From positions 1 through 64,000 of the IMG/VR virus record IMGVR_UViG_3300032236_001850: a stretch of DNA of 64,000 nucleotides, one strand, 5' to 3'. Numbering within the stretch: position 1 is the stretch's first letter; each line of letters starts with the position of its first letter. Position numbers and translations under genes: made by a program. The notes under the pieces are model-generated. The model worked only from the letters and a program-made list of their open reading frames with translations, made no database searches and was not told the origin of the DNA. Shown here piece after piece: positions 12,314-62,395 of this stretch.

Positions 12314-13183
12314 ATGAGAATATTAAAAGCAACATACGGAGATCAGGATATAACTGAATTGATAAGATCAAGGATCAATAATCAAAAATTAGTTATTAGA
12401 GTAAATAATGATATATGTGGTGATCCAAATCCAGGAACAATAAAATCACTAAATATTGATTGGACCGATGGTGGTAAATTTTTCAGCCAATCCTGGATTG
12501 AAGGCACCACTTGTACAATACCAAAGTCAATAAATAGAAAATTGGGTATATTTTATTCCAATAATAAGGATTATCAAACCTACCCAACCATAAAAGAATC
12601 TTTAGAAAGAATAAAAATTGCATCCGATGGTATTGCTGATGTGTTTACGTGTTTATGGGAAAGAATGGACAGTAATCCATTTCCTGAATCCCCTAGTTGG
12701 TATAAAGTTTCCTCGCATCTAACACAAACAATTCAGATACTACAAACCTTATATAGTGCTAGATCCTCAGGTGAATATGATTATGTAAGCTTTCTTGAGC
12801 ATGATTGTTTATATGCCGAGGGATGCTTCGATTATCCAGATTTTGAAAGTGGACAAATGTTATGTAATATGAATTATATAGGTCTATGTAAAGAGGGATG
12901 GCAGGAAAGAAATCAAAATGACAAACCTTTATCACAAATAACAATGAGATTTCATGATGCAATATCACATTTTGAGTCGATTTTACCAAATGCTATCTTA
13001 ACAAACAGCGGATTGGTTGAACCTCAATGTGAAATTCTAGAATGGAGATCTATAAATCCATCAGTTCATGTTAATCATGGATTTCATTTCACTTCTCATT
13101 TTTCTATCTATAGTAAGGATAGAATATCCGGGTATGATCCATACTGGGGTGATTTTAGAAAATTTTCAAATTTATTTTTTTAA
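12314..13183 (+). CDS. Putative glycosyltransferase-like protein with N-terminal lectin-like module
   Basis: ATYG..DIT...N..CGDPNPG..K.L resembles SUEL-type lectin-like domains; YVSFLEHDCLY is a DxD-like motif. Confidence 0.45.
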   Translation: MRILKATYGDQDITELIRSRINNQKLVIRVNNDICGDPNPGTIKSLNIDWTDGGKFFSQSWIEGTTCTIPKSINRKLGIFYSNNKDYQTYPTIKESLERIKIASDGIADVFTCLWERMDSNPFPESPSWYKVSSHLTQTIQILQTLYSARSSGEYDYVSFLEHDCLYAEGCFDYPDFESGQMLCNMNYIGLCKEGWQERNQNDKPLSQITMRFHDAISHFESILPNAILTNSGLVEPQCEILEWRSINPSVHVNHGFHFTSHFSIYSKDRISGYDPYWGDFRKFSNLFF

Positions 13184-13206
13184 TCCGCAACTTTTTATTA
13201 TCTTTG
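13175..13206 (+). promoter_or_regulatory. Conserved 32-bp promoter (copy 1)
   Basis: TTTTTTTAATCCG-N11-TATCTTTG. Confidence 0.85.
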
Positions 13207-13210
13207 CAAT

Positions 13211-13495
13211 ATGAGAAAAGCAAGAACGATCATACATGTTAACCAGCACAACATAAAAGCGAATGCTAGAGGTGAAAGTAAACCTGTATTAACGTGTAAG
13301 ACCTCTAAGGGTAACAATTACTCTAACGAGATTGTGATTCTCGGGCAAGATGGCAAGGAAGCAGCAAGAGTAATCTACTCTCCCAATAAGCCATTAGCAT
13401 GTGGAGCTAAAGTTTGGATAGAAACATACAGTGGAGTTCAAATAGACAATCCTATTGATGTAAAAGAAGCAACAAAAACAATTTGTAAGATATAA
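13211..13495 (+). CDS. Hypothetical phage protein
   Basis: Intact ORF directly after the promoter. Confidence 0.75.
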   Translation: MRKARTIIHVNQHNIKANARGESKPVLTCKTSKGNNYSNEIVILGQDGKEAARVIYSPNKPLACGAKVWIETYSGVQIDNPIDVKEATKTICKI

Positions 13496-13497
13496 AG

Positions 13498-13887
13498 ATG
13501 TCAAGAAAAAAATCAACCGCTCACGTTGTCGTATTGAACCAAAACGGACAAGTACTTTGTGTTAGTAGAAAGGACAATCATAATGATTTTGGATTGCCCG
13601 GGGGTAAGATTGAAAAGAAAGATAAAAGTAATAAATCTGCTGCGATCAGGGAAACTCTAGAGGAAACTGGAATAGTGGTTAAAAAGGCTACTCTAATTTA
13701 TGCTGAACATAGAAGAGGTGCAATGGGTTACACTTATTTAGCAACCGATTGGTCTGGAGAAATTGGAACTGATGAACCACACATGGTTAAATGGGGAGAA
13801 TTTACAGATTTAGTTGCTGGAACATACGGGGAATGGAATTTGAAGGTTTTCAAATCTTTATCTGATTATAAAAAAGTAAAAAAATGA
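13498..13887 (+). CDS. Nudix hydrolase
   Basis: Nudix box GGKIEKKDKSNKSAAIRETLEETG. Confidence 0.9.
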   Translation: MSRKKSTAHVVVLNQNGQVLCVSRKDNHNDFGLPGGKIEKKDKSNKSAAIRETLEETGIVVKKATLIYAEHRRGAMGYTYLATDWSGEIGTDEPHMVKWGEFTDLVAGTYGEWNLKVFKSLSDYKKVKK

Positions 13888-14117
13888 AAAAAGCAGGAAT
13901 TATAATATCAATGTTACTTGGTGGTGCTTTATTGATGTGCATATTAATTAGTGCTACCAAACCAAAGAATGAATTATCAAATTACACAGTAGCAAAAACG
14001 TGTAGTGGTTTCACTGACGCTGAGTATTTTATAAATTCCTATAAAAACAACGGATACACTGTTAAGTTTATGATTGGTGATCGAAATGGTTGTTTGGTGG
14101 TGATGGAAAAAATGTAA
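13884..14117 (+). CDS. Small membrane-anchored protein
   Basis: N-terminal hydrophobic helix. Confidence 0.7.
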   Translation: MKKAGIIISMLLGGALLMCILISATKPKNELSNYTVAKTCSGFTDAEYFINSYKNNGYTVKFMIGDRNGCLVVMEKM

Positions 14118-14122
14118 TAATT

Positions 14123-14524
14123 ATGGAAATATTAAAAGGACACGTTACAAAAAATAATAATAATTGGATTTTTAAATGGACCTATCTTATAGAGGATGGA
14201 GACGCTGTTCATATGAAGTCAGCTCCACTTTCACCTGAATACATACACGGAGTAAATGATGGAGATAAGGTTGAGGCCTACATCGTTGAAACAAAAGATG
14301 GTGAAACTCTGGCAAGGCTTTTACCCAAAGATCCGTACGATACGCCATACTCAAATGAATTTCCAGAATTGTGGGTTAAGAATGTTGAGGATGGATCTGT
14401 TCATGAGGTTTTCAAATACATAAAAGATCACGAAGGTGAAATCCATATTTGGTGTAGCACTTGGTATGGACATCACAGAATAGGTAGGGATTGTATATTT
14501 ACACATGTTGCTTACAAAGAATAA
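14123..14524 (+). CDS. Hypothetical protein
   Basis: Start reassigned to MEILKG. Confidence 0.7.
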   Translation: MEILKGHVTKNNNNWIFKWTYLIEDGDAVHMKSAPLSPEYIHGVNDGDKVEAYIVETKDGETLARLLPKDPYDTPYSNEFPELWVKNVEDGSVHEVFKYIKDHEGEIHIWCSTWYGHHRIGRDCIFTHVAYKE

Positions 14525-14540
14525 TTAAACAAAAGAAAAG

Positions 14541-15164: not shown

Positions 15165-15175
15165 GAAATAAAGAT

Positions 15176-15523: not shown

Positions 15524-15525
15524 TC

Positions 15526-18383: not shown

Positions 18384-18391
18384 TATATATC
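18384..18391 (-). promoter_or_regulatory. GATATATA putative late promoter
   Basis: 4 nt upstream of the ATG at 18379. Confidence 0.65.
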
Positions 18392-18408: not shown

Positions 18409-18440
18409 TTTTTTTATTTCGCGAATCTTTCATATGTTTG
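18409..18440 (+). promoter_or_regulatory. Conserved 32-bp promoter (copy 2)
   Basis: TTTTTTTATTTCG-N11-TATGTTTG. Confidence 0.85.
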
Positions 18441-18463
18441 CAATGAAATTAAAAACAATTAAA

Positions 18464-18961
18464 ATGATTAAAAAATTAGTAGAAAATTTGATCTTTGGAT
18501 CCCGATGGTTACTTATACCATTCTATTTGGGTCTTATTGTAGTCATGACAATTTACACTTTTGTCTACACCAAGGAGATTCTCCATCTGGTGTCGGAAGT
18601 TAATCACATAACCAAGGAAGAGGTTATGCTGATGATTCTGGAACTTGTGGATATTGTTATGATAGCAAACTTGGTCAAGATGATTATAACGGGAAGTTAT
18701 AATTCTTTTGTTGACAAGTCACACGGAGTTGATGGTGAGAATGTTTCATCAGGAATGCTTAAAGTTAAGATGAGTACTTCACTCATCGGTGTTTCTTCGA
18801 TTCACTTATTACAAACGTTTATTAATGCCTCTGCCATTAGTTGGGATAACCTAAATAAACAAATGCTTATACATGGATCATTCCTTGTGGGCTCGCTAAT
18901 ACTAGCAATAATAGATTACTTACACGAAAAAGCTGAAGCAAATGCAGGAGGACATCACTAA
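18464..18961 (+). CDS. UPF0114/YqhA-family inner-membrane protein
   Basis: IFGSRWLLIPFYLGL, LVDIVMIANL..MII.GSY..FV, LKVKM..S.IG.SSIHLL; start uncertain (18443 or 18464). Confidence 0.85.
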   Translation: MIKKLVENLIFGSRWLLIPFYLGLIVVMTIYTFVYTKEILHLVSEVNHITKEEVMLMILELVDIVMIANLVKMIITGSYNSFVDKSHGVDGENVSSGMLKVKMSTSLIGVSSIHLLQTFINASAISWDNLNKQMLIHGSFLVGSLILAIIDYLHEKAEANAGGHH

Positions 18962-19136
18962 AAAACAGAAAGAGCATCTGGTTATCATTATAGATGACCT
19001 GGGTAAAATCTCGCCAAAAAAGTACTCTTGTCCATTCGAGAACAAGACAAAGGAGGAAGCAGTAAAAGCTGCTAAGGCTCAGTATGAGCTAAACAACAAG
19101 AACATTTATTATAAATCTTATTATTTCGAACACTAA
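18942..19136 (+). CDS. Hypothetical protein
   Basis: Fills gap in gene train. Confidence 0.55.
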   Translation: MQEDITKKQKEHLVIIIDDLGKISPKKYSCPFENKTKEEAVKAAKAQYELNNKNIYYKSYYFEH

Positions 19137-19149
19137 TTTAATTTTAACT

Positions 19150-19632
19150 ATGAAGAATTTTTTCTATCTTTTTCTGACAATCTTTATTGTCTCGTGTGTG
19201 GGTAATCACCACAAAAAACACAATGGTGAAACCTATGCAACTACAGATCGACCTGGATATTGCTATCATGGCAATGATGGCCTTTGGTATCTGTACTACC
19301 TAAATTCTACCGGTAATGGTTACACTTATGCTGGTACAGCCCAAAACTTTACAAGTTACAACTCATCAGAGACTGTTAGCTGGTCTCCAACAGCAGAGAA
19401 TGTAACAAATTTTGAATCTGTTCCTGAAGGAGTAGCGGAATCTATGACAGAAGCAACGGGTGAAACGACAGGTGGAACTGAAGCTACTGAAGGTGCAGAT
19501 GGAAGCATGTCGGAAGCTGATGGAAGTTCTGAAGGTGGATCTGATGGTGATTCAGGTTCTAGCAGTTCAGATTCAGGATCCGGTGGAGGTGACTCTGGTG
19601 GAGGTGGAGACGGTGGAGGTGGCGGAGAATAG
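19150..19632 (+). CDS. Lipoprotein with Gly/Ser/Glu-rich tail
   Basis: MKNFFYLFLTIFIVSC lipobox. Confidence 0.75.
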   Translation: MKNFFYLFLTIFIVSCVGNHHKKHNGETYATTDRPGYCYHGNDGLWYLYYLNSTGNGYTYAGTAQNFTSYNSSETVSWSPTAENVTNFESVPEGVAESMTEATGETTGGTEATEGADGSMSEADGSSEGGSDGDSGSSSSDSGSGGGDSGGGGDGGGGGE

Positions 19633-23190: not shown

Positions 23191-23198
23191 TATATATC
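23191..23198 (-). promoter_or_regulatory. GATATATA putative late promoter (MoxR operon)
   Basis: Recurrent motif. Confidence 0.65.
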
Positions 23199-23208: not shown

Positions 23209-23240
23209 TTTTTATATTCCGAAAGAATTTATTACTTTTG
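23209..23240 (+). promoter_or_regulatory. Conserved 32-bp promoter (copy 3)
   Basis: TTTTTATATTCCG-N11-TACTTTTG. Confidence 0.85.
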
Positions 23241-23258: not shown

Positions 23259-23726
23259 ATGGATAAAGATCTAGCTGAAGCGGAAGCAAGAGTTCTAAAT
23301 TATATAAGAACAACCAAGGAATATTCTGAAATGAATTTCCAGGATAATAACAGTAAAATATGGGTTGCCCATAATTCGCTGATTGCCGCTGCCAAAATAT
23401 ACATCATCGACAATTATAAATTGATTGACGATTACACTGATCTTGATCTTATATTGAGAAGTGGAGCAACAGGCGGGAGGTTTTATTTTGGGCCAAAAAG
23501 AAACAGGGAGGTTTCTAGATCAAAGGAGTTAACCAGAATTTTAAAAGAACTGGATAACCAAACAATAGTTATAGAAAGCTTCGATGAAGCTATCTATGAC
23601 TGGACAGATGGGGATTTTTCAGTGGTGTTCAATGGTGAATCATACAATTGGATAGACGATGATTCAGTTATAAGTATAGCGTCTTACATAGAAAAAAAAT
23701 TAGAGGAAAATGAAATACAATATTGA
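23259..23726 (+). CDS. Hypothetical protein
   Basis: Start reassigned to MDKDLAE. Confidence 0.7.
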   Translation: MDKDLAEAEARVLNYIRTTKEYSEMNFQDNNSKIWVAHNSLIAAAKIYIIDNYKLIDDYTDLDLILRSGATGGRFYFGPKRNREVSRSKELTRILKELDNQTIVIESFDEAIYDWTDGDFSVVFNGESYNWIDDDSVISIASYIEKKLEENEIQY

Positions 23727-24828
23727 GGAAGTTAACGAATATGTGGCTAAGGGATTGGTTGATAAATGTGAGCATAAAGAACTCCCGATAGCAATCTATA
23801 AATATTCACGTAATTGTCAGTTCGAATGGATCTGGGATAACATCACGATGAATATGAGAGGTACCGTTCTCGATGAGAATGGAAACCTTATAGCCCGTAC
23901 ATTTCCTAAGTTTTTCAATATTGACGAGGGGAACATACCAAATTTACCATTTGAAGTTTTCGAAAAACTTGATGGTTCACTTGGTGTCCTATTCAACTAT
24001 GAGGGAGAATGGCATCTGGCAACACAAGGTTCATTCTATTCTGATATTGCTATTTATGCACAGGAGATATTGAAACGAAACGAAACTTATAAGGATGTGT
24101 TCTCTGAGAAATTTACTTTCCTTTTTGAAATCATATACCCAAAGAATCGAATAGTTTGTTCATATGGTGATGATGAGAAATTGGTGCTTCTTGCTGCTTT
24201 CAATACTAAATCAGGTAGAGAGGTTCCTTATCAGGAATTAAAGGACGTTGCGGAAAGAACTGGATTTGAATGTGCTAAAAGATATGATGGGATCAAGGAT
24301 CTTAAAAAGATAAAATCACTAATCGGTGATAATCAGGAGGGATTTGTTATAAGATTCTCTGATGGAACTAGAGTAAAAGCAAAGGGGGAGGAATATGTAA
24401 GGCTTCATGGGGTTCTGACATCGTTCTCCAACTTAGATATCTGGAGATGCTTAAAAGAGGGAAGCGATTATAGATCTTTAATGGTTGATGTTCCTGATGA
24501 ATATGATGCATGGGTTACAAACATTGAACAGGATCTCCAATCTAATTTTAATTTTATAGAGGCAACGGTAAAGGCCGAATATAAATTATTAGTAAAGAAA
24601 CTTAAAAGTCAAATCCCGACGGAGGAGGAAAGACAAGATCGAAACTCACCAGTACTTAAGGCATACAATAAGGAATTCTTTGAGCTTGTGGAAGGAAACA
24701 GATTAGCTGGGTATTTATTAGATCATCACAGAAATAAGGACTATTCAGGATCAATCTGGAATCAAATAAGGCCGGATTACGAAAAACCATTTTGGACAGA
24801 TTACTCATTAAAAAGAAATAAACCATGA
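23710..24828 (+). CDS. RNA ligase, T4 Rnl1-like
   Basis: Motif I EKLDGSLG, FEIIYPKNRIV, EGFVIRF, RVKAK. Confidence 0.88.
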   Translation: MKYNIEEVNEYVAKGLVDKCEHKELPIAIYKYSRNCQFEWIWDNITMNMRGTVLDENGNLIARTFPKFFNIDEGNIPNLPFEVFEKLDGSLGVLFNYEGEWHLATQGSFYSDIAIYAQEILKRNETYKDVFSEKFTFLFEIIYPKNRIVCSYGDDEKLVLLAAFNTKSGREVPYQELKDVAERTGFECAKRYDGIKDLKKIKSLIGDNQEGFVIRFSDGTRVKAKGEEYVRLHGVLTSFSNLDIWRCLKEGSDYRSLMVDVPDEYDAWVTNIEQDLQSNFNFIEATVKAEYKLLVKKLKSQIPTEEERQDRNSPVLKAYNKEFFELVEGNRLAGYLLDHHRNKDYSGSIWNQIRPDYEKPFWTDYSLKRNKP

Positions 24829-25133
24829 TATACCCAATTATAACAAACCAAAGAAGAAAGTCAAAGATTGAGAAACCCAAGATCGAGACTCTAGGAAGCT
24901 ATACAAAATTAACACCGGAGGAATTCCAGAAACTCATGGCAGAGAGAACAAGAGTTTCTGGTTTAGTTGAATCTATTGGGTATATTAGCAACTGGTACGG
25001 ATTCGATAATCTCAAACATGAGGAGAAGATCGATTTTGTCAGAAGAATCGAAACACCAGAGTATTACACTTTGGCTGCAAGGATTAAAAGAATCATTAAA
25101 AAAGTTAGAAATGGAAGAGGTAATAAGTCATAA
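24825..25133 (+). CDS. Hypothetical protein
   Basis: Overlapping gene train. Confidence 0.65.
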   Translation: MIYPIITNQRRKSKIEKPKIETLGSYTKLTPEEFQKLMAERTRVSGLVESIGYISNWYGFDNLKHEEKIDFVRRIETPEYYTLAARIKRIIKKVRNGRGNKS

Positions 25134-25347
25134 GGTAAGAAGTAAAGTTGGTGAATTCTTATGCAAGAATGGATTTGAAGATAATGGACGAGGATTCTTC
25201 AATGAATATTGTTTGGTTATAGTGGAAGAGAATCACTATTGCGTGGAGATGGATCAGGGACACATGTTTAGCAATGATCTAAATATTTATTGGTTGATAG
25301 GTGTTCTTACTTATAATGGTTTAATGAATAAAAATTACATTCAATAA
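25111..25347 (+). CDS. Hypothetical protein
   Basis: Start reassigned to MEEVISHK. Confidence 0.6.
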   Translation: MEEVISHKVRSKVGEFLCKNGFEDNGRGFFNEYCLVIVEENHYCVEMDQGHMFSNDLNIYWLIGVLTYNGLMNKNYIQ

Positions 25348-25748
25348 TGATTAAAGAACAAGAAATAGAAAAAGCAAAATTAGAGTTTGCAATAGAGCAA
25401 TTGGAGCAACATATAGTTCATCCAATGAAACCCGGTTATAGAAGACATGACGTCATGGATAAGATCAAGGAATTAAAATCCCAGCTTAAGTCCATTACTG
25501 ATTCCGAGAGTAAAGAAATCATCATATTAATCCAAACCGATGGATCTTGCGAGATGGCAAGGGTATCAATGGATGGTGTTGGTGTGATGGAAGGCAACTT
25601 TTGGGATTTTCACCCAGGGTGTCACAATATAAATGAATATGGTGACTTTGGAAACTGTGATGATTTAGCAATAAAGATATTGCTTAAGCTCACAAAGGAA
25701 GGTAAAAAAGCCAAGATAATTAAGGAAAAATATAAATACGAATACTAA
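25347..25748 (+). CDS. Hypothetical protein
   Basis: TAATG-coupled. Confidence 0.7.
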   Translation: MIKEQEIEKAKLEFAIEQLEQHIVHPMKPGYRRHDVMDKIKELKSQLKSITDSESKEIIILIQTDGSCEMARVSMDGVGVMEGNFWDFHPGCHNINEYGDFGNCDDLAIKILLKLTKEGKKAKIIKEKYKYEY

Positions 25749-26395
25749 TGAAAATAATATTACAAGGACATCAGAAGATCTTCTGGACATCTGATTCCCA
25801 CTATAACCACTCCAACATATGTAGTGCTACTAGCGAATGGCCTGCAGGAAGAGGAACTCGGAAATTCAATTCATTGAATGAAATGAACGACCGACTAGTA
25901 TACGAGATCAATGCAATGGTAGGAGAGAATGATATACTAATCCACCTGGGAGATTGGAGCTTTGGTGGCATAGAATCTATCTCGGAGTTTCGAAATAGAA
26001 TTAACTGTAAAAACGTACACATCTTCTTAGGGAACCACGATCATCACATAAAAAACAACAGGGATAATGTGAGAGATCTTTTTGCTAGTGTCAATAAGCT
26101 GGAAACTATAGAGCTTCGAGTTCCACAAGGAAAGGAAACTAAGAAATACACATTTGAATGCTGTCATTTCCCAATAGCTAGTTGGGATGGACTTGGCAAG
26201 GGATATTCACATTTGCATGGACACGTTCATCTTCCTGGTAACTTAAAGATACACAAGGGAAGAGCAATGGATGTTGGTGCAGACGGAAACAACTACAAGC
26301 CATATTCATTGAATGAAATATTGAAGGCATTGGAGGGAAGACCTAAGATGCACTTATCATTACCAAAGGATCATCACACTGAGGAGGGGGACTAA
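25748..26395 (+). CDS. Calcineurin-like metallophosphoesterase
   Basis: SDSHYNH, HLGDWS, GNHD, HGHVH. Confidence 0.9.
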   Translation: MKIILQGHQKIFWTSDSHYNHSNICSATSEWPAGRGTRKFNSLNEMNDRLVYEINAMVGENDILIHLGDWSFGGIESISEFRNRINCKNVHIFLGNHDHHIKNNRDNVRDLFASVNKLETIELRVPQGKETKKYTFECCHFPIASWDGLGKGYSHLHGHVHLPGNLKIHKGRAMDVGADGNNYKPYSLNEILKALEGRPKMHLSLPKDHHTEEGD

Positions 26396-26396
26396 T

Positions 26397-26783
26397 ATGA
26401 AAACTTTATATCTATTGAGAGGATTACCAGGATCTGGTAAAACAACACTAGCTAAAAATATTGGCGGAGTTCACTATGAAGCCGACCAATATTTTGAGGC
26501 TAATGCTGGTGTACATTTCGATGGATATCAGTTGCAAAATGCCCATAATTACTGTAGAGAAAATGTAATTGGTGCTATGGAGTTGGGTGAACCTAGCATC
26601 ATAGTTTCCAATACTTTGACTAGAAAAAAAGAGGTCGAAGAATACATGGAACTCGGTGAAAAATATGGCTATAGAGTTTTCTCACTGGTTGTTGAAAATC
26701 GCCACGGTGGTGAAAATTCACACGATGTTGGTGAAGCAACATTAAACAAAATGAAAAACAGATTTGATTTAAAATTAATGTGA
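26397..26783 (+). CDS. P-loop kinase (AAA_33/PNK-kinase-like)
   Basis: LLRGLPGSGKTT, EADQYF, VSNT. Confidence 0.85.
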   Translation: MKTLYLLRGLPGSGKTTLAKNIGGVHYEADQYFEANAGVHFDGYQLQNAHNYCRENVIGAMELGEPSIIVSNTLTRKKEVEEYMELGEKYGYRVFSLVVENRHGGENSHDVGEATLNKMKNRFDLKLM

Positions 26784-27523
26784 TGGAAGAAAAATATTTG
26801 ACGCTTGAGGAGGCAAAGAAAAAATATGGGACATTTGAGAATGGTAGATTCTATGGGGTTCATAAAATATTCGACATTTACATAAATGATAAGCCACAGA
26901 GTGTTTATCGTGTGTCTGGATATGAACATCAACTCGGAAAGAATAACGGTGGACCTGCAGAATGGTGGCTTGATTATTCAACAGAAGTAAATCCAGAGAG
27001 GGAATTGGTTCCATATCTTGACCGCGGTGTACACAGGATATGTTGGGAAATCCGTTACAAACAGACCAATAGAACAAAACACAAATGGGGTGAATGGAGA
27101 ATCAATGCCACTGGGCTTTGTGAGATCCACGCAAACGGTAGGCACATTTACACCATGGTTAACTCAGATTTAGGTTCTGCTCTTTCAAATGCGCATGTTA
27201 TGACCGAAAGGCTTCTAAGTCACGTTTACGATTTTATAAATCCTGAGAATGACAATAACAGAAAGATCTATTACTATGGCCTACCAGCAACAGTAAGAAC
27301 TGGTTCAGCTCCCGGTGAGATCTGGGTTTATCCTGACTATGAAAAAATACCTGAAGCTAAATGGTGGAAGATATACTCGGAAAGAAGAACGCCAGCAGAA
27401 GATCTTGGTTCTAGGGAGGATAGAGAAATGGAGGAATCTGATGTGGAAGAGCATAAGGGATACGGATCGATCAATCACGGTGATGCTTTTTGGGATGGTA
27501 TGATTAACTGGTTTAGAAAATAA
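26780..27523 (+). CDS. Hypothetical protein
   Basis: Intact ORF. Confidence 0.75.
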   Translation: MMEEKYLTLEEAKKKYGTFENGRFYGVHKIFDIYINDKPQSVYRVSGYEHQLGKNNGGPAEWWLDYSTEVNPERELVPYLDRGVHRICWEIRYKQTNRTKHKWGEWRINATGLCEIHANGRHIYTMVNSDLGSALSNAHVMTERLLSHVYDFINPENDNNRKIYYYGLPATVRTGSAPGEIWVYPDYEKIPEAKWWKIYSERRTPAEDLGSREDREMEESDVEEHKGYGSINHGDAFWDGMINWFRK

Positions 27524-27933
27524 TGAAGTTTCTACATAGAGAACTGAATATGAGTTATTTCTCAGAATTTTCTGAGGAGAACATTAGAATTATATCTTTG
27601 AAAATTGATGAGATTAATGAGGATATGGTCAGTATGCTTTTTTCCATTATGCACGAATTTCTTGATTCCAAAACTCTTAACCATATATGTTATCACACTA
27701 GTAAATTACTGGGTATCGATGGCAATAATATGTATATTATAATGGATGGGGATTGGGTAAAAACAAAAGATCTAAATTTTGGTAAAGATTTGGATTTTAT
27801 AGTAATCGATGATAGAAGGGGCGATCCTCAATCCATAATTAATGCAATTAAAATAAAAACGAAACAAGGCGATGTTTTTCCGGTAGAAAGATATCTAGAG
27901 ACATTAATAATATTTTGGAAAACAATAAAATGA
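27523..27933 (+). CDS. Hypothetical protein
   Basis: TAATG-coupled. Confidence 0.7.
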   Translation: MKFLHRELNMSYFSEFSEENIRIISLKIDEINEDMVSMLFSIMHEFLDSKTLNHICYHTSKLLGIDGNNMYIIMDGDWVKTKDLNFGKDLDFIVIDDRRGDPQSIINAIKIKTKQGDVFPVERYLETLIIFWKTIK

Positions 27934-28346
27934 TGAACACATATAACCTATTTTTGGACGATATAAGACATCCTTATGATTGCATAAGTTATATGCCATC
28001 CCCAGGAATATATTCAAAATACGACTGGAAAACGGTCCGCAATTATGATGAATTCGTTTCTTTCATCACAAAGAACGGACTTCCCGATCTAATCTCATTC
28101 GATCATGATCTAGCGGACGAGCACTATAACCCTGACATGTACAACGGCCAGGAGATCTACAACAAGCACTATTCAGAATTCAATGAGAAGACTGGTATGG
28201 ACTGTGCAAAATGGCTCGTTGACTATTGCATAGACAACAAAAAGGAACTTCCTGATTTTGTGGTTCATTCCATGAATCCAGCGGGAGGCGAGAACATCAG
28301 ACAACTATTAACACAATTTAAAGAATTTCAACACAAAAATCAATAA
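27930..28346 (+). CDS. Cyclic-phosphate-processing receiver (cREC) domain protein
   Basis: LFLDDIR.P, ISFDHDL, TG.DCAKWL, VHSMNPAG. Confidence 0.8.
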   Translation: MMNTYNLFLDDIRHPYDCISYMPSPGIYSKYDWKTVRNYDEFVSFITKNGLPDLISFDHDLADEHYNPDMYNGQEIYNKHYSEFNEKTGMDCAKWLVDYCIDNKKELPDFVVHSMNPAGGENIRQLLTQFKEFQHKNQ

Positions 28347-28347
28347 C

Positions 28348-29025
28348 ATGGATTACGGAGCAGAATTTAGAAAGTACGCACAGAGCGAAAAGGGAATTAG
28401 TTCATTAACAATGGACTATCATGCAAAACACGTCGAAGCATCAATGACTCCAATGATTCTCGAAGAAAGAGAATTAAGGGTAACACAGATGACAGTTTTT
28501 GACAGATTAATGATGGACAGAATCCTTTGGGTTGCTGGACCGGTTAACGATAGAATGTCAACAATAGTTCAAGCACAACTTATGTTCTTGGATTCTGTGG
28601 AAGTGAAGGACATCATCATGCACATTGATTCACCTGGTGGATCTGTTAAAAGTGGTTTAAGTATGGTTGATGTTATGGACTACATCAAATCTGATATCTC
28701 AACGATCAACACAGGTATGGCTGCTTCAATGGGATCAGTGCTTTTAGGTGCTGGTACAAAAGGTAAAAGATCATCGTTAAGATTTAGTAAAGTGATGCTT
28801 CACCAATCCAGCGGTGGTTTCAGAGGAAACATCCAAGATGCTGAAATTGACTGGAAAGAGTGGCAAGAGGTAAACTCTATCCTATTTGATTTGCTTGGTG
28901 ATTTCTGTGACAAAGATCCAGAACAAGTTAAGAAAGACTCACAAAGAGATTTCTGGATGAGTGCTCAGGAAGCAGTTGATTATGGAATCATTGACGAGAT
29001 CGTAAAAGGTAAAAGAGTAAGATAA
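28348..29025 (+). CDS. clpP: ATP-dependent Clp protease proteolytic subunit
   Basis: VFDRLMMDRI, QAQLMFL, IDSPGGSV, GMAASMGS, MLHQ. Confidence 0.95.
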   Translation: MDYGAEFRKYAQSEKGISSLTMDYHAKHVEASMTPMILEERELRVTQMTVFDRLMMDRILWVAGPVNDRMSTIVQAQLMFLDSVEVKDIIMHIDSPGGSVKSGLSMVDVMDYIKSDISTINTGMAASMGSVLLGAGTKGKRSSLRFSKVMLHQSSGGFRGNIQDAEIDWKEWQEVNSILFDLLGDFCDKDPEQVKKDSQRDFWMSAQEAVDYGIIDEIVKGKRVR

Positions 29026-29435
29026 TGGAAAGAAAGATACCAAGTAATTTGGGAGCACAAATCCTACACCCCCTAATTGGGTGGAGTGACGAGATGCACA
29101 CGGAGGAAAGGTATGTTGAGAAGATACAAGAATTTGAGAGAAAGGTTGAGAAGTCAATCATAGAGACATTCAAAAGAATTGATATTCATGGGATCGTTAA
29201 AACCGATCCCTATTCTCTTCCATACAAGAATGAGGTTAAAGTAACACTAAGAGGTGAAAGTTATCTTAATGGACCTTATGAGATCTTTAGAGTTGTTAGA
29301 CCCATTATAAAGCAATTACTAAATGAGAATCTTTATAAAATTAGATTCTATGTTTATATTGATGTTGATACTAAGGGAAGACATCCATTAAGCATGGGTG
29401 AGATTAATTATTATTTCAGATATTATGAGCACTAA
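29025..29435 (+). CDS. Hypothetical protein
   Basis: TAATG-coupled. Confidence 0.7.
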   Translation: MERKIPSNLGAQILHPLIGWSDEMHTEERYVEKIQEFERKVEKSIIETFKRIDIHGIVKTDPYSLPYKNEVKVTLRGESYLNGPYEIFRVVRPIIKQLLNENLYKIRFYVYIDVDTKGRHPLSMGEINYYFRYYEH

Positions 29436-29688
29436 GGAGGAAGCACTAGAAAAAAGACATCAGTTTATTTTGAACTCAGTGGAAACTTTTGGTCTTAATG
29501 TTGATTTTGATCAATGGAACGAGAAGGGATGGATCAGAATAGAAAGTAAGGTTTGTAAAGATTTTAGACCTTTGATAATCTTCCAGGATTTTACTGAGGA
29601 TGCTATTCTTGATGAATTAAGAAATTATATGTATTGTCTAGGTGAATACAGCTTTAAATTAAAGTTTAAAAATTTATTGGATTTATAA
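29425..29688 (+). CDS. Hypothetical protein
   Basis: Start reassigned to MSTKEE. Confidence 0.65.
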   Translation: MSTKEEALEKRHQFILNSVETFGLNVDFDQWNEKGWIRIESKVCKDFRPLIIFQDFTEDAILDELRNYMYCLGEYSFKLKFKNLLDL

Positions 29689-29879
29689 TGGCACGTCTTA
29701 CTATAAACGAGAAGGAGCAAGAGTCTCTTGATAAATGGAAAAAAGCAATATCTGAACTTTATGAAGATCCAGGTAATATCCATTTCACTGTCAATGTAAC
29801 AGGAATCGGAACCACGGTAATAGCACACAGTAGTAAGGTTCAAGTTACCAAGGATATAACTGATTACAGTTCTTGGTAG
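29688..29879 (+). CDS. Hypothetical protein
   Basis: TAATG-coupled. Confidence 0.65.
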   Translation: MARLTINEKEQESLDKWKKAISELYEDPGNIHFTVNVTGIGTTVIAHSSKVQVTKDITDYSSW

Positions 29880-29887
29880 GATATATA
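29880..29887 (+). promoter_or_regulatory. GATATATA putative late promoter
   Basis: 4 nt before the ATG at 29892. Confidence 0.65.
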
Positions 29888-29891
29888 GTGG

Positions 29892-30623
29892 ATGCTTAAA
29901 CACATAAAGGAATATGAGGAATACGATCCCTCACTGGAAAAACTAAACGAGGGTCTGGGAGATCTTTGGGAGAGATTTAAAAAAGCTGTTAGTGACTTTT
30001 TCAGCAGAAAGAAAACTGTTGTGGTGAAGAAGCCGGGAGCTAAAGTTATGGATCCAAGTCTTATAACGGGGGAACATATGATATATTTAACACATCAGCA
30101 AGGACCAACTGGACTTGCTAATATCTTAGATATACTTAGAGGCGATGCTAAAATTGAGGACAACTCAAGAAATAAGCTGCTTAATAATATGCCACAGTCA
30201 GATCCAAGATACCAAAAAGTTCAGACAGGCAAAAGCAAACAAGCAGTCAAGGCATTTTTAGAATATCAAAAATCCACTTGGGATGAATATAAAAAAGAGG
30301 CTTTAACCAAAATTAATGATCCTCAGAATGCCAAGGTTAAACAAGCCATAGAGAAGGCTAAGGCTAAGATACCGGATTTCACTAAAGATTTTATAACAAC
30401 AGTGGCTTATAAGGAATCAAGATTTGATCCTAATCCAAAAACAAATAAGGCATATAGAGGTTTATTTCAGATAGGTGATAGTGCTTGGGCTGAACTTAAA
30501 AGAGTTTATCCAATGAAATATAAAGGTGCTAAAGCTCCTCTTGCACCAATCAAGAACACGGAAGCTGGGTGTGATTATTTAAAATTGGTTTATGATAGAT
30601 TTGAGAATCTAATTAAGCATTAA
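29892..30623 (+). CDS. Lytic transglycosylase (SLT)-like protein with capsid-targeting-like leader
   Basis: VAYKESRFDP...YRGLFQI; N-term MLKHIKEYEEY..KLNE/G. Confidence 0.7.
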   Translation: MLKHIKEYEEYDPSLEKLNEGLGDLWERFKKAVSDFFSRKKTVVVKKPGAKVMDPSLITGEHMIYLTHQQGPTGLANILDILRGDAKIEDNSRNKLLNNMPQSDPRYQKVQTGKSKQAVKAFLEYQKSTWDEYKKEALTKINDPQNAKVKQAIEKAKAKIPDFTKDFITTVAYKESRFDPNPKTNKAYRGLFQIGDSAWAELKRVYPMKYKGAKAPLAPIKNTEAGCDYLKLVYDRFENLIKH

Positions 30624-34922: not shown

Positions 34923-34930
34923 TATATATC
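34923..34930 (-). promoter_or_regulatory. GATATATA putative late promoter
   Basis: 4 nt upstream of the ATG at 34918. Confidence 0.65.
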
Positions 34931-34935: not shown

Positions 34936-34967
34936 TTTTTTTTATCCGCAAGAATGTTTTATATTTG
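34936..34967 (+). promoter_or_regulatory. Conserved 32-bp promoter (copy 4)
   Basis: TTTTTTTTATCCG-N11-TATATTTG. Confidence 0.85.
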
Positions 34968-36110: not shown

Positions 36111-36149
36111 AAAAATCCTCGGGAATATTTTTTATTCTCGAGGATTTTT
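36111..36149 (+). terminator. Long inverted repeat / terminator overlapping promoter copy 5
   Basis: 17-bp arms AAAAATCCTCGGGAATA / TATTCTCGAGGATTTTT (one G-U). Confidence 0.7.
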
Positions 36150-36159
36150 ATTATATTTG
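36128..36159 (+). promoter_or_regulatory. Conserved 32-bp promoter (copy 5)
   Basis: TTTTTTATTCTCG-N11-TATATTTG. Confidence 0.85.
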
Positions 36160-40102: not shown

Positions 40103-40134
40103 TTTTTTTATCTCGAATCTTTTATTTATATTTG
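40103..40134 (+). promoter_or_regulatory. Conserved 32-bp promoter (copy 6)
   Basis: TTTTTTTATCTCG-N11-TATATTTG. Confidence 0.85.
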
Positions 40135-47576: not shown

Positions 47577-47612
47577 AAAATAACCTTAATTTTCATTAAG
47601 GTTATTTTTTTT
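47577..47612 (+). terminator. Intrinsic terminator sharing its T-tract with promoter copy 7
   Basis: AAAATAACCTTAAT-TTTC-ATTAAGGTTATTTT(TTTT). Confidence 0.8.
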
Positions 47613-47636
47613 GTTCGAATATTTTTCATATATTTG
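47605..47636 (+). promoter_or_regulatory. Conserved 32-bp promoter (copy 7)
   Basis: TTTTTTTTGTTCG-N11-TATATTTG. Confidence 0.85.
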
Positions 47637-54816: not shown

Positions 54817-54848
54817 TTTTTTTAATTCGAAATTAATCATTACATTTG
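54817..54848 (+). promoter_or_regulatory. Conserved 32-bp promoter (copy 8)
   Basis: TTTTTTTAATTCG-N11-TACATTTG. Confidence 0.85.
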
Positions 54849-56354: not shown

Positions 56355-56386
56355 TTTTTTTATTCCGGAAGAATTTCATATATTTG
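56355..56386 (+). promoter_or_regulatory. Conserved 32-bp promoter (copy 9), probably driving the ncRNA cluster
   Basis: TTTTTTTATTCCG-N11-TATATTTG. Confidence 0.85.
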
Positions 56387-57420: not shown

Positions 57421-57452
57421 TTTTTTTAATCCGAATTATTACCATATATTTG
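57421..57452 (+). promoter_or_regulatory. Conserved 32-bp promoter (copy 10), inside a perfect 15-bp inverted repeat
   Basis: TTTTTTTAATCCG-N11-TATATTTG; arms 57428-57442 / 57454-57468. Confidence 0.85.
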
Positions 57453-57489
57453 TGTAATAATTCGGATTTTTAATTTTAAATAAAAACTT

Positions 57490-58238: not shown

Positions 58239-58982
58239 ATGTCACGTATACTTTGTCCATGTTGTTTATCTCCATTGGTAGTCACTCACCAAGAAAGGTA
58301 TCAAGATATCAGCGAGCACGTATCCAACCCCAACGGAACGCCATCTATGAAGGACGGATACCAATGCCTAAATTTTGATTGGTGTTTTGCTTCAATGTAT
58401 AAATGTACATGGTTGGAGGACGGAGACTTCTTTTGTGGACCTCCACCAGAGGGCATGAATTACGGAGACATTAGAGATATCCTCGAGAGACACTGGAAAT
58501 TTCCAACCAAGACTATAGCGATTAATTCGTGGAATTTTTTCTATAAACTTGGTGAGATAGAAACCAAAAGAAGAATTAAAACCTATAAAATAGGAAGGTA
58601 CACCTTTAGATTTACACCCAAGGGGAAGGGTTATAAATACCCACCAAATGAACAATACATGCCAAGAAGGTTCTCCTATAAAATGGATATACTAAAAGAG
58701 ACATCCGATGGATGTCACACGTACATACTCAGCGACTATAGCATGGTAAGACATTCATTATCAGACTTTAGATCAAATTATAGGGATGCATTTAATCCAA
58801 AAACCAAATATCCAGATTGGGCAATTGATAAATGCATGGAGTTAATCAGATGCTCAACTCTTAGTGGTTACAATGACAGAAGAAGATATAAATTGATCTC
58901 AATGGTTCTCATAAAAATATTATTTCCGGTCAAGGTGAGGAGGATAAAAAATCTTGCAAAAGAGAAAAAAAGATTTTTTTAA
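58239..58982 (+). CDS. Hypothetical protein with N-terminal Cys motifs
   Basis: CPCC..C....C. Confidence 0.7.
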   Translation: MSRILCPCCLSPLVVTHQERYQDISEHVSNPNGTPSMKDGYQCLNFDWCFASMYKCTWLEDGDFFCGPPPEGMNYGDIRDILERHWKFPTKTIAINSWNFFYKLGEIETKRRIKTYKIGRYTFRFTPKGKGYKYPPNEQYMPRRFSYKMDILKETSDGCHTYILSDYSMVRHSLSDFRSNYRDAFNPKTKYPDWAIDKCMELIRCSTLSGYNDRRRYKLISMVLIKILFPVKVRRIKNLAKEKKRFF

Positions 58983-59005
58983 TTCGAAATCTTTTCATAT
59001 ATTTG
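58974..59005 (+). promoter_or_regulatory. Conserved 32-bp promoter (copy 11)
   Basis: TTTTTTTAATTCG-N11-TATATTTG. Confidence 0.85.
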
Positions 59006-60672: not shown

Positions 60673-61025
60673 TGAGGAGACTTTTTAAATTTTATAATGA
60701 CGAGGCTGGATGGTTTGTGGATTTACCAGAGTGGGAGGGATCGAAAGCGGATCTTCAGATGGTTTCCGGTGCTGATACATTTCTGGATATACTTTCACAG
60801 GGAGACACAACAGTTTATGTCACTTTATCCGACGAGGATTTCGATGGTGCAGATTTCATGGAGTTTCTATATCTTGGCAGATTGGAAAATTGGGAGCTTG
60901 GTGAAGGTGCATGGTATAGGATGGGAAAATATATGGGGATCAGATACGATATTGATATGTGGCTTTGTGATGTTACCAAGTTTGTATTCGGAGGATTTCC
61001 AGCAACAATTTATTTTAAATCATGA
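60672..61025 (+). CDS. Hypothetical protein
   Basis: WFVDLPEW....LQMVSGADTFLD, WLCDVTKFVFG. Confidence 0.75.
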   Translation: MRRLFKFYNDEAGWFVDLPEWEGSKADLQMVSGADTFLDILSQGDTTVYVTLSDEDFDGADFMEFLYLGRLENWELGEGAWYRMGKYMGIRYDIDMWLCDVTKFVFGGFPATIYFKS

Positions 61026-61276
61026 AATACGGAATAGTTATAGCAGCAATTATATTGGTTATTAGCATTCAATGTTCGGGACCAAAAAATATATGCAAGA
61101 AAGCGGAGAGAATTGATGGTGAGGTGATCTATGCTATACCCTCGCCGGGTGGAAGAACAGTCACACTAGAAACCAAAAACGGCAGAGTTATAATTTACAG
61201 GGTTCCTTTAGAGCAACCACTTTATAATATCCCTGTTTGTAAGCACAGAGGAAAATATTATTGGGTGATGCCATGA
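61022..61276 (+). CDS. Small lipoprotein-like/membrane protein
   Basis: Hydrophobic N-term ending ISIQC. Confidence 0.65.
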   Translation: MKYGIVIAAIILVISIQCSGPKNICKKAERIDGEVIYAIPSPGGRTVTLETKNGRVIIYRVPLEQPLYNIPVCKHRGKYYWVMP

Positions 61277-61686
61277 AGGGAAGAGTAATATCAATACTAG
61301 CTTATAATAGATTCACTTTTGGAGATCAGGTTGTTTCACAGTTTGTTCTTTTTGAGTGTAAATGGTTATTCTCTATCATTTTCTTTTATTTCCATAAAAG
61401 CGACGGTTCTCAGGATAGATTCCACACTCATGCATTCAATGCTCTTTCGATAAAATTATTTGGTAGATATGATGAGTATTTGCTTCTTAGCGAGGAAACT
61501 GGAGAATATGTGGTAAGACCAAGAGTAAATACATTACAGTATTTTCCTAGGGATTCCTATCACAAAATAGGTAAATCAAACGGCTGTATGACAATATTAT
61601 TCTCTGGTCCATGGAATAAAACGTGGAAGGAATACATTAACGGAAAGGTTGTTAATTACAACTGGAATAGAAAACAAAAATTATGA
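61273..61686 (+). CDS. Cupin-like protein
   Basis: FHTHAF..G.YDE..YHKI..TILFSGP. Confidence 0.6.
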   Translation: MKGRVISILAYNRFTFGDQVVSQFVLFECKWLFSIIFFYFHKSDGSQDRFHTHAFNALSIKLFGRYDEYLLLSEETGEYVVRPRVNTLQYFPRDSYHKIGKSNGCMTILFSGPWNKTWKEYINGKVVNYNWNRKQKL

Positions 61687-62060
61687 CAGAATCAGAAATG
61701 TTGAAGAACTTCTTCGACTTCGATGGATTATATCGAGAAATAAGAAAAAACACATTAGAGGATTTCCCAACTCTGGAGGAATACCTTGATTTCATAGAAG
61801 ACCAGGGTGAGGATAAGGTGAAGGCAGAAAGTCTTTATCTTTTCATAATTGATCCAATTCACGATGATATTTTCATGGACTTTGAACCTGGAGAGGATAA
61901 TCAAATAGTTGTTAAAGATGACATTCTAGAAATCTACTTCTGGCAGGACACTGGTTATTCTAATGAGGGTGGAACCCATTATGGAGGATATGAATACTGG
62001 TTTAGGATAAACCTTGAACATGAAAATTTTATTAGTTTAGAAGTTGTAAATCAAAATTAA
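61683..62060 (+). CDS. Acidic hypothetical protein
   Basis: Intact ORF. Confidence 0.7.
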   Translation: MTESEMLKNFFDFDGLYREIRKNTLEDFPTLEEYLDFIEDQGEDKVKAESLYLFIIDPIHDDIFMDFEPGEDNQIVVKDDILEIYFWQDTGYSNEGGTHYGGYEYWFRINLEHENFISLEVVNQN

Positions 62061-62061
62061 A

Positions 62062-62352
62062 ATGAGCGAGACAGTAAACAATTATTGGTTCTGTGAAATA
62101 GGGCCATTACATGAAGGTGAAAGCGTTGGTGATTGGCCATTGAGAAGAGCAGTAGAGGAAAAATTCAGTGAAGTATTGGGTAGGGATGCATTGACATGTT
62201 CCTCCGGTTGGGGTTTAACCTACGAGATTAAGGATGTTATTTCAAGCATAAGACATCTGCATATAACTGACGAATCTGGTGAAAAGTTGAGAAAAATCAA
62301 GGAGATATTATACAATAAAGAATATCTAGAGTTTCCAAATCTCGAAAAATAA
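62062..62352 (+). CDS. Hypothetical protein
   Basis: Intact ORF. Confidence 0.7.
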   Translation: MSETVNNYWFCEIGPLHEGESVGDWPLRRAVEEKFSEVLGRDALTCSSGWGLTYEIKDVISSIRHLHITDESGEKLRKIKEILYNKEYLEFPNLEK

Positions 62353-62363
62353 TTCACAAATAA

Positions 62364-62395
62364 TTTTTTTATATCGAAACTTTTTCATATATTTG
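62364..62395 (+). promoter_or_regulatory. Conserved 32-bp promoter (copy 12)
   Basis: TTTTTTTATATCG-N11-TATATTTG. Confidence 0.85.

What the first reader, a model, noticed from the sequence alone, without database searches (positions are those of the whole stretch)
13175..62395. Twelve copies of a rigid 32-bp promoter with an invariant CG exactly 11 nt upstream of the Bacteroidetes -7 box
Seen: copies start at 13175, 18409, 23209, 34936, 36128, 40103, 47605, 54817, 56355, 57421, 58974 and 62364. In all twelve, a 5-8 nt T-tract starts 24 nt before TAnnTTTG and the YCG ends 11 nt before it, with no spacing variation. Each lies just upstream of a plus-strand gene train. Known: Bacteroidetes housekeeping promoters are TTTG(-33)/TAnnTTTG(-7) with some spacer tolerance; T4 middle promoters combine the host -10 with a MotA box replacing -35. 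Inference: a phage-specific promoter class in which T-tract+YCG replaces the -33 element and may bind a phage activator or be methylation-sensitive.
Basis: partly seen in the sequence, partly recalled or inferred. Interest (0 to 1): 0.75.

Follow-up and report, generated by a model that had tools for sequence, protein, structure and literature searches.

The report
Jumbo-phage promoter with a fixed spacer CG
The twelve repeats are copies of the main pre-late promoter of an uncultivated 434-kb Bacteroidota jumbo phage: a host-type -7 box joined to a phage-specific upstream half (a T tract plus a CG at a fixed distance) that sampled bacterial genomes lack and related phages conserve.

Summary
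All 12 copies are at the stated coordinates, against 0.01 expected by chance. The window is the first 64 kb of a complete 434,509-bp IMG/VR phage genome. That genome has 77 T-tract + TAnnTTTG boxes, and 45 of them carry CG exactly 11 nt before the box.

The CG is not invariant across the genome. About 17 intergenic promoters with the same T tract and spacing lack it. They cluster at 134-193 kb.

Related 340-430 kb phages keep both subclasses. Between this phage and its ~80%-identical relative, the CG survives in 36 of 37 orthologous promoters while neighbouring spacer bases change.

The composite pattern is not enriched in 201 sampled Bacteroidota genomes, and promoter-like boxes in two Flavobacteriaceae samples show no CG peak.

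A second motif, GATATATA, sits before the structural genes and the window's minus-strand genes. It probably belongs to a gp55-like late sigma.

No MotA, AsiA or DNA methylase homologue was found. The phage does encode a paralogue of the host primary sigma with a rewritten region 4.2 helix. That is my favoured reader of the upstream half, but this is inferred, not shown.

Verdict: a real, conserved, phage-specific promoter class and a new variant of a known kind.

The parts
13175..13206 (+). CG-class promoter copy 1 (TTTTTTTAATCCG-N11-TATCTTTG). ATG at 13211, only 4 nt after the box, so the mRNA may be leaderless.
18409..18440 (+). CG-class promoter copy 2 (box TATGTTTG), in front of the ORF train 18434-19632.
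23209..23240 (+). CG-class promoter copy 3 (T5 tract, box TACTTTTG), in front of 23259-30623, which includes an RNA-ligase-like gene. The divergent minus-strand genes use a GATATATA motif at 23191-23198 instead.
34936..34967 (+). CG-class promoter copy 4. ATG at 34986.
36128..36159 (+). CG-class promoter copy 5. ATG at 36180. The CG lies in the 3' arm of an 11-bp inverted repeat.
40103..40134 (+). CG-class promoter copy 6. ATG 19 nt after the box.
47605..47636 (+). CG-class promoter copy 7 (T8 tract). A 10-bp hairpin ends directly before the T tract.
54817..54848 (+). CG-class promoter copy 8 (box TACATTTG). ATG at 54869 (phosphohydrolase-like gene).
56355..56386 (+). CG-class promoter copy 9. 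ATG at 56406.
57421..57452 (+). CG-class promoter copy 10. ATG at 57490. The element sits inside a 15-bp inverted repeat (AATCCGAATTATTAC / GTAATAATTCGGATT) whose loop holds the -7 box.
58974..59005 (+). CG-class promoter copy 11. ATG 16 nt after the box.
62364..62395 (+). CG-class promoter copy 12. ATG at 62431.

Best explanation
The elements are the main pre-late (early/middle) promoters of a T4-like jumbo phage of Bacteroidota.

Anatomy, numbering the T of TA as -12 as in F. johnsoniae promoters (PMC6847099):
- The 3' half, TAtATTTG followed by C, is an idealised Bacteroidota sigma-A -7 box.
- The T7 tract covers -36 to -30. It begins at the same offset as the -33 TTTG in the host-like promoters of phage G009, but lacks the G.
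- The CG lies in the spacer at -25/-24.

Proposed mechanism (inferred): host core RNA polymerase reads these promoters with a sigma-A-type factor. Host sigma A can start transcription through the perfect -7 box. That is needed because the phage's own sigma gene sits behind such a promoter. The phage's 300-aa sigma-A paralogue then takes over or reinforces transcription. Its region 4.2 helix reads LTGETVRIRYMKG where bacterial sigma A has LTRERVRQIKEKA. I propose that this helix fits the phage upstream half rather than TTTG, which would separate phage promoters from host promoters.

The CG defines a subclass: about 60% of T-tract promoters in this phage and 63-78% in the relatives. It is kept by selection and acts as an extra, base-specific determinant of strength or timing. 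The CG-less subclass instead keeps ATTTC next to the box.

Shown: the anatomy, the statistics, the conservation, the lack of enrichment in sampled bacterial genomes, the sigma gene and its altered helix. Inferred: which protein reads the T tract and the CG, and the timing.
For: - 12 of 12 copies in the window against 0.01 expected.
- 45 of 77 T-tract boxes genome-wide carry CG at -13, against 0-2 at neighbouring offsets.
- The CG class drives helicase, RNA-ligase and small-ORF trains, the tRNA arrays and two of the sigma genes. It is nearly absent from the block that holds the terminase and portal genes.
- The same architecture occurs in relatives G006, G007, G008 and L341: 45/77, 35/45, 29/46 and 7/9.
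- The CG is kept in 36 of 37 G000/G006 orthologous promoters while spacer neighbours vary.
- The composite is not enriched in 201 Bacteroidota genomes.
- Two Flavobacteriaceae samples show no CG peak and no T tract.
- The phage sigma has the same N terminus and length as bacterial RpoD. Pfam detects only region 2 in it. It aligns along its full length to solved RpoS/SigA, with substitutions in the 4.2 helix.
- Every relative that has these promoters carries this sigma, and its gene is preceded by a CG-class promoter in four lineages.
- Among 80 viral loci with sigma-A-like genes, multi-copy composite promoters occur only in five loci (L337-L341, three lineages), all with derived 2.4 and 4.2 helices. 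None of the loci with a host-like RERVRQIKEK helix has them.
- G009 has a host-like helix and host-like TTTG/-7 promoters.
- The literature reports that T4-like 'group 2' jumbo phages carry RpoD-like and minimal sigmas (PMC7824862).
Against: - There are no transcription data. No RNA run was listed, so start sites and timing are unproven.
- The sigma gene itself has a CG-class promoter. Host sigma A must therefore read at least that copy, and it could read them all.
- The CG lies in the spacer, where sigma region 4 is not known to make base contacts.
- L347 has a similar 4.2 helix but no such promoters, and the L343 group has derived helices without them.
- The co-occurrence of sigma and promoter may be no more than shared ancestry within one clade. 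G009 is only a distant relative: 51 of 629 proteins are shared.
- The true host is unknown.
Confidence: 0.45

Rival explanations
1. Host sigma-A holoenzyme alone reads the whole element. The T tract is a G-less -33 element or an A-tract, and the CG is a favoured flexible or contacted step in the spacer. Together they make unusually strong early promoters, much as T4 early promoters are conserved beyond the sigma-70 consensus.
For: The -7 box is a perfect host type. The T tract starts at the same offset as the TTTG of G009's host-like promoters. The phage sigma gene itself depends on such a promoter. F. johnsoniae promoters have AT-rich motifs near -18 and -28, so the CG at -24.5 falls between them (PMC6847099).
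Against: Sampled bacterial promoters show neither a T tract nor a CG at this offset. If only flexibility mattered, TA or CA would do as well, yet CG is kept in 36 of 37 orthologues. This reading also gives no reason for the phage to keep a sigma-A paralogue with a rewritten 4.2 helix.
Confidence: 0.25
2. A separate phage DNA-binding protein binds A-T7-ATTYCGAA, centred near -30. It would be a functional analogue of T4 MotA or a shut-off repressor. It would switch the CG class on or off as a block and leave the CG-less class untouched.
For: The genome has two stable subclasses that differ mainly at the CG, and the subclass is conserved between orthologues. The element lies about 11 nt upstream of the -10-like box, as the MotA box does (established T4 knowledge). 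In this phage the core often reads TTCGAA, a palindrome.
Against: No MotA C-terminal or AsiA homologue was found. The palindrome is not kept in the relatives, which read ATCCCG(T/A). No candidate protein could be singled out: 169 proteins share the required distribution across genomes.
Confidence: 0.2
3. The CG is a target for methylation or another base modification, and that modification gates promoter use.
For: The only support is that the conserved dinucleotide is CG, often inside TCGA or TTCGAA.
Against: The genome shows no C5 or N6/N4 methyltransferase family hit. TCGA (observed/expected 0.99) and TTCGAA (1.11) are neither avoided nor enriched. In lineage L341 the base before the CG varies.
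Confidence: 0.03
4. The repeats are not promoters. They would be terminator tails, hairpin elements or recombination repeats that happen to contain a -7-like box.
For: Six copies have long inverted repeats that include the CG, and five have a hairpin directly before the T tract.
Against: Only 5 of 77 have a hairpin before the T tract, against 9% of other T6 runs. Only 9 of 39 have any stem of 6 bp or more through the CG. The elements share the orientation of the gene that follows and lie 4-38 nt before its start. Conservation is strongest at the -7 box positions.
Confidence: 0.03

Closest known systems
Bacteroidota primary-sigma (sigma ABfr) promoters: -33 TTTG / -7 TAnnTTTG
   Same: The -7 box is identical (TAHHTTTG). 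The upstream element starts at the same offset as the TTTG of host-like promoters. Leaders are short and A-rich, with TAAAA-like stretches before the start codon.
   Different: The G of TTTG is replaced by a 7-nt T tract. An A precedes the tract. A CG sits at -25/-24 at a fixed distance. Spacing is rigid. The pattern is not enriched in 201 sampled Bacteroidota genomes.
Phage T4 middle promoters (MotA box centred at -30 plus a host -10; AsiA/MotA sigma appropriation)
   Same: The host-type -10-like element is kept. The -35-like element is replaced by a phage-specific motif that ends about 11-13 nt upstream of it. The phage is T4-like, with a gp55-like late sigma, T4-type RNA ligases and a Dda-like helicase.
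   Different: The motif sequence is unrelated. No MotA or AsiA homologue is present. This phage carries a full-length sigma-A paralogue instead.
Phage-encoded sigma factors that redirect host core polymerase (SPO1 gp28; the RpoD-like sigmas of 'group 2' jumbo phages, PMC7824862)
   Same: A phage gene for a complete sigma-70-family protein is transcribed early, and the phage has promoters that differ from host promoters.
   Different: Here the -10-like half stays of host type and only the upstream half differs. No promoter specificity has been described for these Bacteroidota phage sigmas, and none is shown here.
Phage T4 early promoters
   Same: There are dozens of near-identical, very strong-looking copies, conserved beyond the host consensus and spread through the early regions.
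   Different: T4 early promoters keep the host -35 hexamer. These replace it.

Membership tests
Bacteroidota sigma-A promoter | -7 element TAnnTTTG | tested here: met
   All 12 copies and all 77 T-tract boxes carry it. The consensus is TAtATTTG followed by C.
Bacteroidota sigma-A promoter | -33 element TTTG (or TTG) about 19-21 nt upstream of the -7 element | tested here: not met
   The position is filled by TTTTTTT. G is absent at offsets -24 to -18 in 48 of 48 CG-class copies.
Bacteroidota sigma-A promoter | Transcription starts 4-5 nt after the -7 element | not testable with these tools
   No RNA run holding the sequence was listed.
T4 middle promoter / MotA-AsiA system | MotA box (a/t)(a/t)(a/t)TGCTTtA centred at -30 | tested here: not met
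   The conserved sequence is A-T7-ATTYCGAA and contains no TGCTT.
T4 middle promoter / MotA-AsiA system | The phage encodes MotA and AsiA | tested here: not met
   Pfam MotCF and AsiA give no match in the complete genome at E <= 1. Only those two models were tried.
T4 middle promoter / MotA-AsiA system | Host-type -10 element kept, with the phage motif about 12 nt upstream | tested here: met
   The host-type -7 box is kept, and the YCG ends 11 nt before it.
Phage-sigma-dependent promoter class | The phage encodes a sigma-70-family protein with altered promoter-reading residues | tested here: met
   A 300-aa sigma-A paralogue is present. Its region 2.4 reads WHIRK against WWIRQ in bacteria, and its region 4.2 reads LTGETVRIRYMKG against LTRERVRQIKEKA.
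Phage-sigma-dependent promoter class | The promoter type and the sigma type occur together across lineages | tested here: inconclusive
   Five loci (three lineages) with the promoters all have derived helices, and no locus with a host-like helix has the promoters. However, L347 and the L343 group have derived helices without these promoters, and the positive lineages form one clade.
Phage-sigma-dependent promoter class | The sigma directs transcription from the promoter | not testable with these tools
   This needs biochemistry. The complex-prediction job was not folded for DNA and is not evidence either way.

The most novel reading that the evidence does not exclude
A clade of uncultivated freshwater Bacteroidota jumbo phages has rewritten promoter recognition in two layers. 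A captured host primary sigma with a remodelled 4.2 helix reads a T7 tract in place of the -33 TTTG. A single spacer dinucleotide, CG at -25/-24, works as a binary address that sorts pre-late promoters into two regulons. A so far unidentified phage factor, or an unprecedented spacer contact of the sigma, reads that CG.
Probability: 0.25. Interest if true: 0.75.

Novelty: new variant of a known kind. Interest (0 to 1): 0.55.

Why it matters
Transcription programmes of Bacteroidota phages, and of huge uncultivated phages in general, are almost unknown. This work gives a concrete promoter grammar that can be searched for:
- a T-tract/-7 family with CG and CG-less subclasses;
- a GATATATA late-type motif.

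The grammar holds for a whole clade of 340-430 kb phages. It links to a phage-borne paralogue of the unusual Bacteroidota primary sigma.

If that sigma reads the upstream half, the case would show how changing a few residues in region 4.2 re-addresses a polymerase. It would also supply orthogonal promoter/sigma pairs for genetic tools in Bacteroidota.

The motifs also allow operons and timing classes to be annotated in related metagenomic phage genomes.

Tried and rejected
- **blastn against the phage collection:** 7.9 kb gave no match.
- **RNA evidence:** no RNA run was listed. Only pond and freshwater DNA runs hold the sequence.
- **Complex prediction:** I submitted the sigma region 4 with the upstream half as DNA. 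The job was not folded for this kind of complex and is not evidence.
- **Bidirectional promoter with the CG at the centre:** a reverse TAnnTTTG lies at 13174 and 23208. I rejected this reading because the minus-strand genes have their own GATATATA motif.
- **T tract as a terminator tail:** rejected, with 5 of 77 hairpins against 9% in controls.
- **CG kept because it sits in a hairpin stem:** rejected as a general cause. Only 9 of 39 copies have such a stem, and 6 of those are long.
- **TTCGAA palindrome as a dimer site:** weakened, because the relatives read ATCCCG.
- **Methylation:** no methylase hit and no site avoidance.
- **MotA/AsiA:** absent.
- **Finding a CG-reading protein by its distribution across genomes:** unworkable. 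169 proteins are shared with G006-G008 and absent from G009, which is only distantly related.
- **Third conserved motif for the RpoD-like sigma:** reading the unexplained upstream regions by eye showed none.
- **Promoter types of other sigma-bearing phage lineages:** looked at briefly and too mixed to use.
- **Pfam and PHROGs on genes behind CG-less promoters:** almost all of unknown function, so no timing could be read from them.
Full report
**Observation**

Each has a T run of 5-8 nt that begins 24 nt before TAnnTTTG. Each has CCG or TCG ending 11 nt before the box. The pattern TTTTT-N5-YCG-N11-TANNTTTG matches 12 times in the window. The mean over 100 dinucleotide-preserving shuffles is 0.01. 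Every copy lies in a gap between ORFs, with a same-strand start 4-38 nt after the box. E. coli-type -35/-10 matches are not enriched in the same region: 55 found against 69 expected.

**Where the window lies**

The window is bases 1-64000 of a single 434,509-bp contig. It is an IMG/VR virus record with direct terminal repeats, rated complete. GC content is 35%. A crude ORF call covers 93% of the genome with code 11, giving 541 + strand and 88 - strand ORFs. DNA runs that hold the sequence are pond and freshwater metagenomes, and no RNA run was listed. No match was found by blastn in the phage collection.

The gene content is T4-like:
- a Dda-like helicase and two RNA ligases in the window;
- terminase at 264 kb, two portal paralogues at 282-286 kb, a DNA ligase and an SbcC-like protein;
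- 31 tRNA genes at 210-229 kb.

**The motif across the genome**

I counted CG at every offset before all 626 TAnnTTTG boxes. Offset -13 gives 70; most other offsets give about 4-25 and the highest gives 29.

Among 77 boxes with at least 6 of 7 T at -24 to -18:
- 45 have CG at -13;
- 2 have it at -14;
- other offsets have none or one.

The CG-class consensus is A-TTTTTTT-ATT-Y-CG-AA ... T ... TAtATTTG-C. Information content is low at -9 to -6.

The copies lie at 13-235 kb and 390-422 kb. Only two or three lie in the block at 235-389 kb, which holds the terminase and portal genes. They precede helicase, RNA-ligase and small-ORF trains and the tRNA arrays. They also precede two of the phage's three sigma genes.

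**A CG-less subclass**

The CG is therefore not invariant. About 17 intergenic promoters have the same T tract, spacing and box but AA, GA, GG or TG in place of CG. Nearly all lie at 134-193 kb, before small ORFs of unknown function. Their consensus keeps ATTTC next to the box.

A third set lies at 181-193 kb. It keeps the box and the leader but has TTTAACG-N7-ATCGTTG instead of the T tract.

**A second promoter type**

GATATATA occurs about 75 times in intergenic DNA, 5-30 nt before starts, on both strands. It is found throughout the genome, including the block with the terminase and portal genes. In the window it sits before the minus-strand gene groups, at 5159, 18384, 23191 and 34923 (lower coordinates).

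The phage has a 119-aa protein that contains only a sigma region 2. It matches the PHROG family 'late sigma transcription factor'. By analogy with T4 gp55 and its TATAAATA promoters, GATATATA is probably the late promoter. This is an inference.

**Relatives**

A scan of IMG/VR with the motif mostly returned relatives of this phage, at 65-90% nucleotide identity.

| Genome or locus | Size | T-tract boxes with CG at -13 |
|---|---|---|
| G000 (this phage) | 434.5 kb | 45 of 77 |
| G006 | 430 kb | 45 of 77 |
| G007 | 348 kb | 35 of 45 |
| G008 | 343 kb | 29 of 46 |
| L341 (more distant) | 20.9-kb locus of a 123-kb contig | 7 of 9 |
| G009 | 326 kb | 1 of 19 |

G007 and G008 read TTTTTTTATCCCG where this phage reads TTTTTTTATTYCGAA. 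The T tract, the CG and their distances are therefore what is conserved, not the TTCGAA palindrome. G008 also has a clustered CG-less subclass, and a few of its copies have the CG one nt closer to the T tract.

I aligned 53 orthologous promoters of G000 and G006, which are about 80% identical. The CG is kept in 36 of 37 CG-class pairs. One pair shows CG changed to TG. A second apparent loss was an indexing artefact caused by gaps. Positions -15, -11, -8 to -6 and -3 vary among the ungapped pairs. Most CG-less promoters stay CG-less, with four switches or 1-nt shifts. This is the pattern expected under selection on the CG and on subclass identity.

**Host promoters**

The host is unknown, so I sampled widely.
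- In 400 kb each of a Paenimyroides and a Zobellia genome, promoter-like boxes (86 and 55) show no CG peak at -13 (4 and 1), no T tract, and only a weak TTG signal.
- The composite pattern occurs 1-3 times in five 2.7-5.1 Mb Bacteroidota genomes.
- In a relaxed form it occurs 0-5 times per genome in 201 Bacteroidota genomes. That is no more than the reversed-pattern control.
- Hits in the species-genome collection are single copies, in Bacteroidota and in AT-rich unrelated taxa.

It is not met in the genomes searched.

**Who reads it**

No AsiA or MotA C-terminal domain was found. No C5 or N6/N4 methyltransferase was found either. TCGA and TTCGAA are at expected frequency.

The phage encodes three sigma-like proteins:
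- the gp55-like one described above;
- a 222-aa ECF-like one;
- a 300-aa protein that is plainly a paralogue of the Bacteroidota primary sigma.

The 300-aa protein has the same start as bacterial RpoD (MRQIKV... against MRQLKIT...) and the same length, at 31-32% identity. JGI names its homologues 'RNA polymerase primary sigma factor'. It aligns from region 1.2 to 4.2 with solved RpoS and SigA. Pfam detects only region 2 in it.

In the 4.2 helix, bacteria have LTRERVRQIKEKA and the phage has LTGETVRIRYMKG. By the alignment to E. coli RpoS and established work on sigma 70, three of the residues that read the -35 element are changed: the equivalents of R584, R586 and Q589. Region 2.4 reads WHIRK instead of WWIRQ.

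All five relatives searched carry a homologue of this sigma. G009 is another Bacteroidota jumbo phage, but it shares only 51 of 629 proteins with this one. Its homologue has a host-like helix, LTKERVRQIKEKA. G009 has ordinary TTTG/-7 promoters and no T-tract/CG class.

Among 80 viral loci with sigma-A-like genes, multi-copy composite promoters occur only in the five loci L337-L341, which represent three lineages. All five have derived helices. None of the loci with a host-like helix has them.

Several facts weigh against a simple reading:
- L347 has a similar helix without such promoters, and the L343 group has derived helices without them.
- The positive lineages form one clade.
- The sigma gene itself lies behind a CG-class promoter in all four lineages examined. 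Host sigma A must therefore be able to use that class at least weakly.

**Conclusion**

These are real, conserved, phage-specific promoters of the pre-late genes. The T tract takes the place of the -33 element. The CG at -25/-24 is a selected determinant that defines one of two subclasses.

My preferred mechanism is a hand-over from host sigma A to the phage sigma-A paralogue, with the paralogue reading the upstream half. Confidence in this is about 0.45. Host holoenzyme alone (0.25) and a separate phage DNA-binding protein (0.2) remain open. Methylation and non-promoter readings are unlikely.

Iyer and colleagues noted that T4-like 'group 2' jumbo phages, including ones from Bacteroidota, carry both minimal and RpoD-like sigmas (PMC7824862). 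I found no paper that describes their promoters.

**Limits**

- Gene calls are a simple ORF heuristic.
- The host is unknown.
- There are no transcription data.
- The complex-prediction job was not folded and is not evidence.

Noticed in passing
window 5159-5166, 18384-18391, 23191-23198, 34923-34930 (minus strand); about 75 intergenic copies in G000: A second conserved motif, GATATATA, lies 5-30 nt before start codons on both strands. It is the only motif before most genes of the block that holds the terminase and portal genes. It is probably the late promoter of the gp55-like sigma.
   Followed up: partly
G000 near 18379, 34918, 127970, 131910, 163015, 170614, 175532 and others: In about 14 cases GATATATA is followed by exactly 4 nt and then ATG. 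Three CG-class copies (13175, 96688, 199285) also have ATG 4 nt after the box. This suggests leaderless mRNAs in a phage of a phylum that lacks Shine-Dalgarno sites.
   Followed up: no
G000 181-193 kb (L423): A third promoter subclass keeps TATATTTG and the gtaattaaaa leader but has the upstream module TTTAACG-N7-ATCGTTG, an imperfect inverted repeat, instead of the T tract. Three tandem copies about 310 bp apart lie at 189077, 189388 and 189701. Some copies have the box variant TATATTTA.
   Followed up: partly
G000 204386-205288 (-), 274045-274713 (+), 281665-282024 (+): There are three sigma-family genes. One is a primary-sigma paralogue. One is ECF-like and lies next to a dCMP deaminase. 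One is gp55-like and lies next to a TnsA-like endonuclease gene. No promoter motif could be assigned to the ECF-like sigma.
   Followed up: partly
window 57428-57468; also 36111-36156 and G000 68646-68687, 79002-79041, 157082-157115: Some promoter copies are embedded in long perfect inverted repeats of 11-17 bp that include the CG. At 57421 the loop holds the -7 box and a T run follows. These look like overlapping terminator/promoter units.
   Followed up: partly
G000 210-229 kb (L424, L425): Thirty-one tRNA genes lie in arrays behind CG-class promoters. Two nearly identical promoter-plus-leader units are at 213626 and 225785.
   Followed up: partly
G000 282552-284186 and 284191-285843: Two adjacent ORFs of 544 and 550 aa both match the same portal-protein PHROG family.
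   Followed up: no
viral loci L337-L416: Sigma-A-like genes are common in IMG/VR contigs: 587 stretches matched. Their 4.2 helices are very diverse (for example TAEYMCQRYKLA, TSEWARLVYSKA, SREGVRQVRKKA). Many phage lineages may have re-addressed the host polymerase in their own ways.
   Followed up: partly
Genome-contig loci L117, L136, L161, L173: One 'uncultured bacterium' bin (SRR6231146_bin.88) has the promoter pattern on four short contigs. It may be a relative of this phage binned as a bacterium.
   Followed up: no
G000 about 113.1-113.8 kb: ORFs on both strands run through a stretch of repeated GGT/GCT-rich triplets. This may be a collagen-like Gly-X-Y coding repeat.
   Followed up: no
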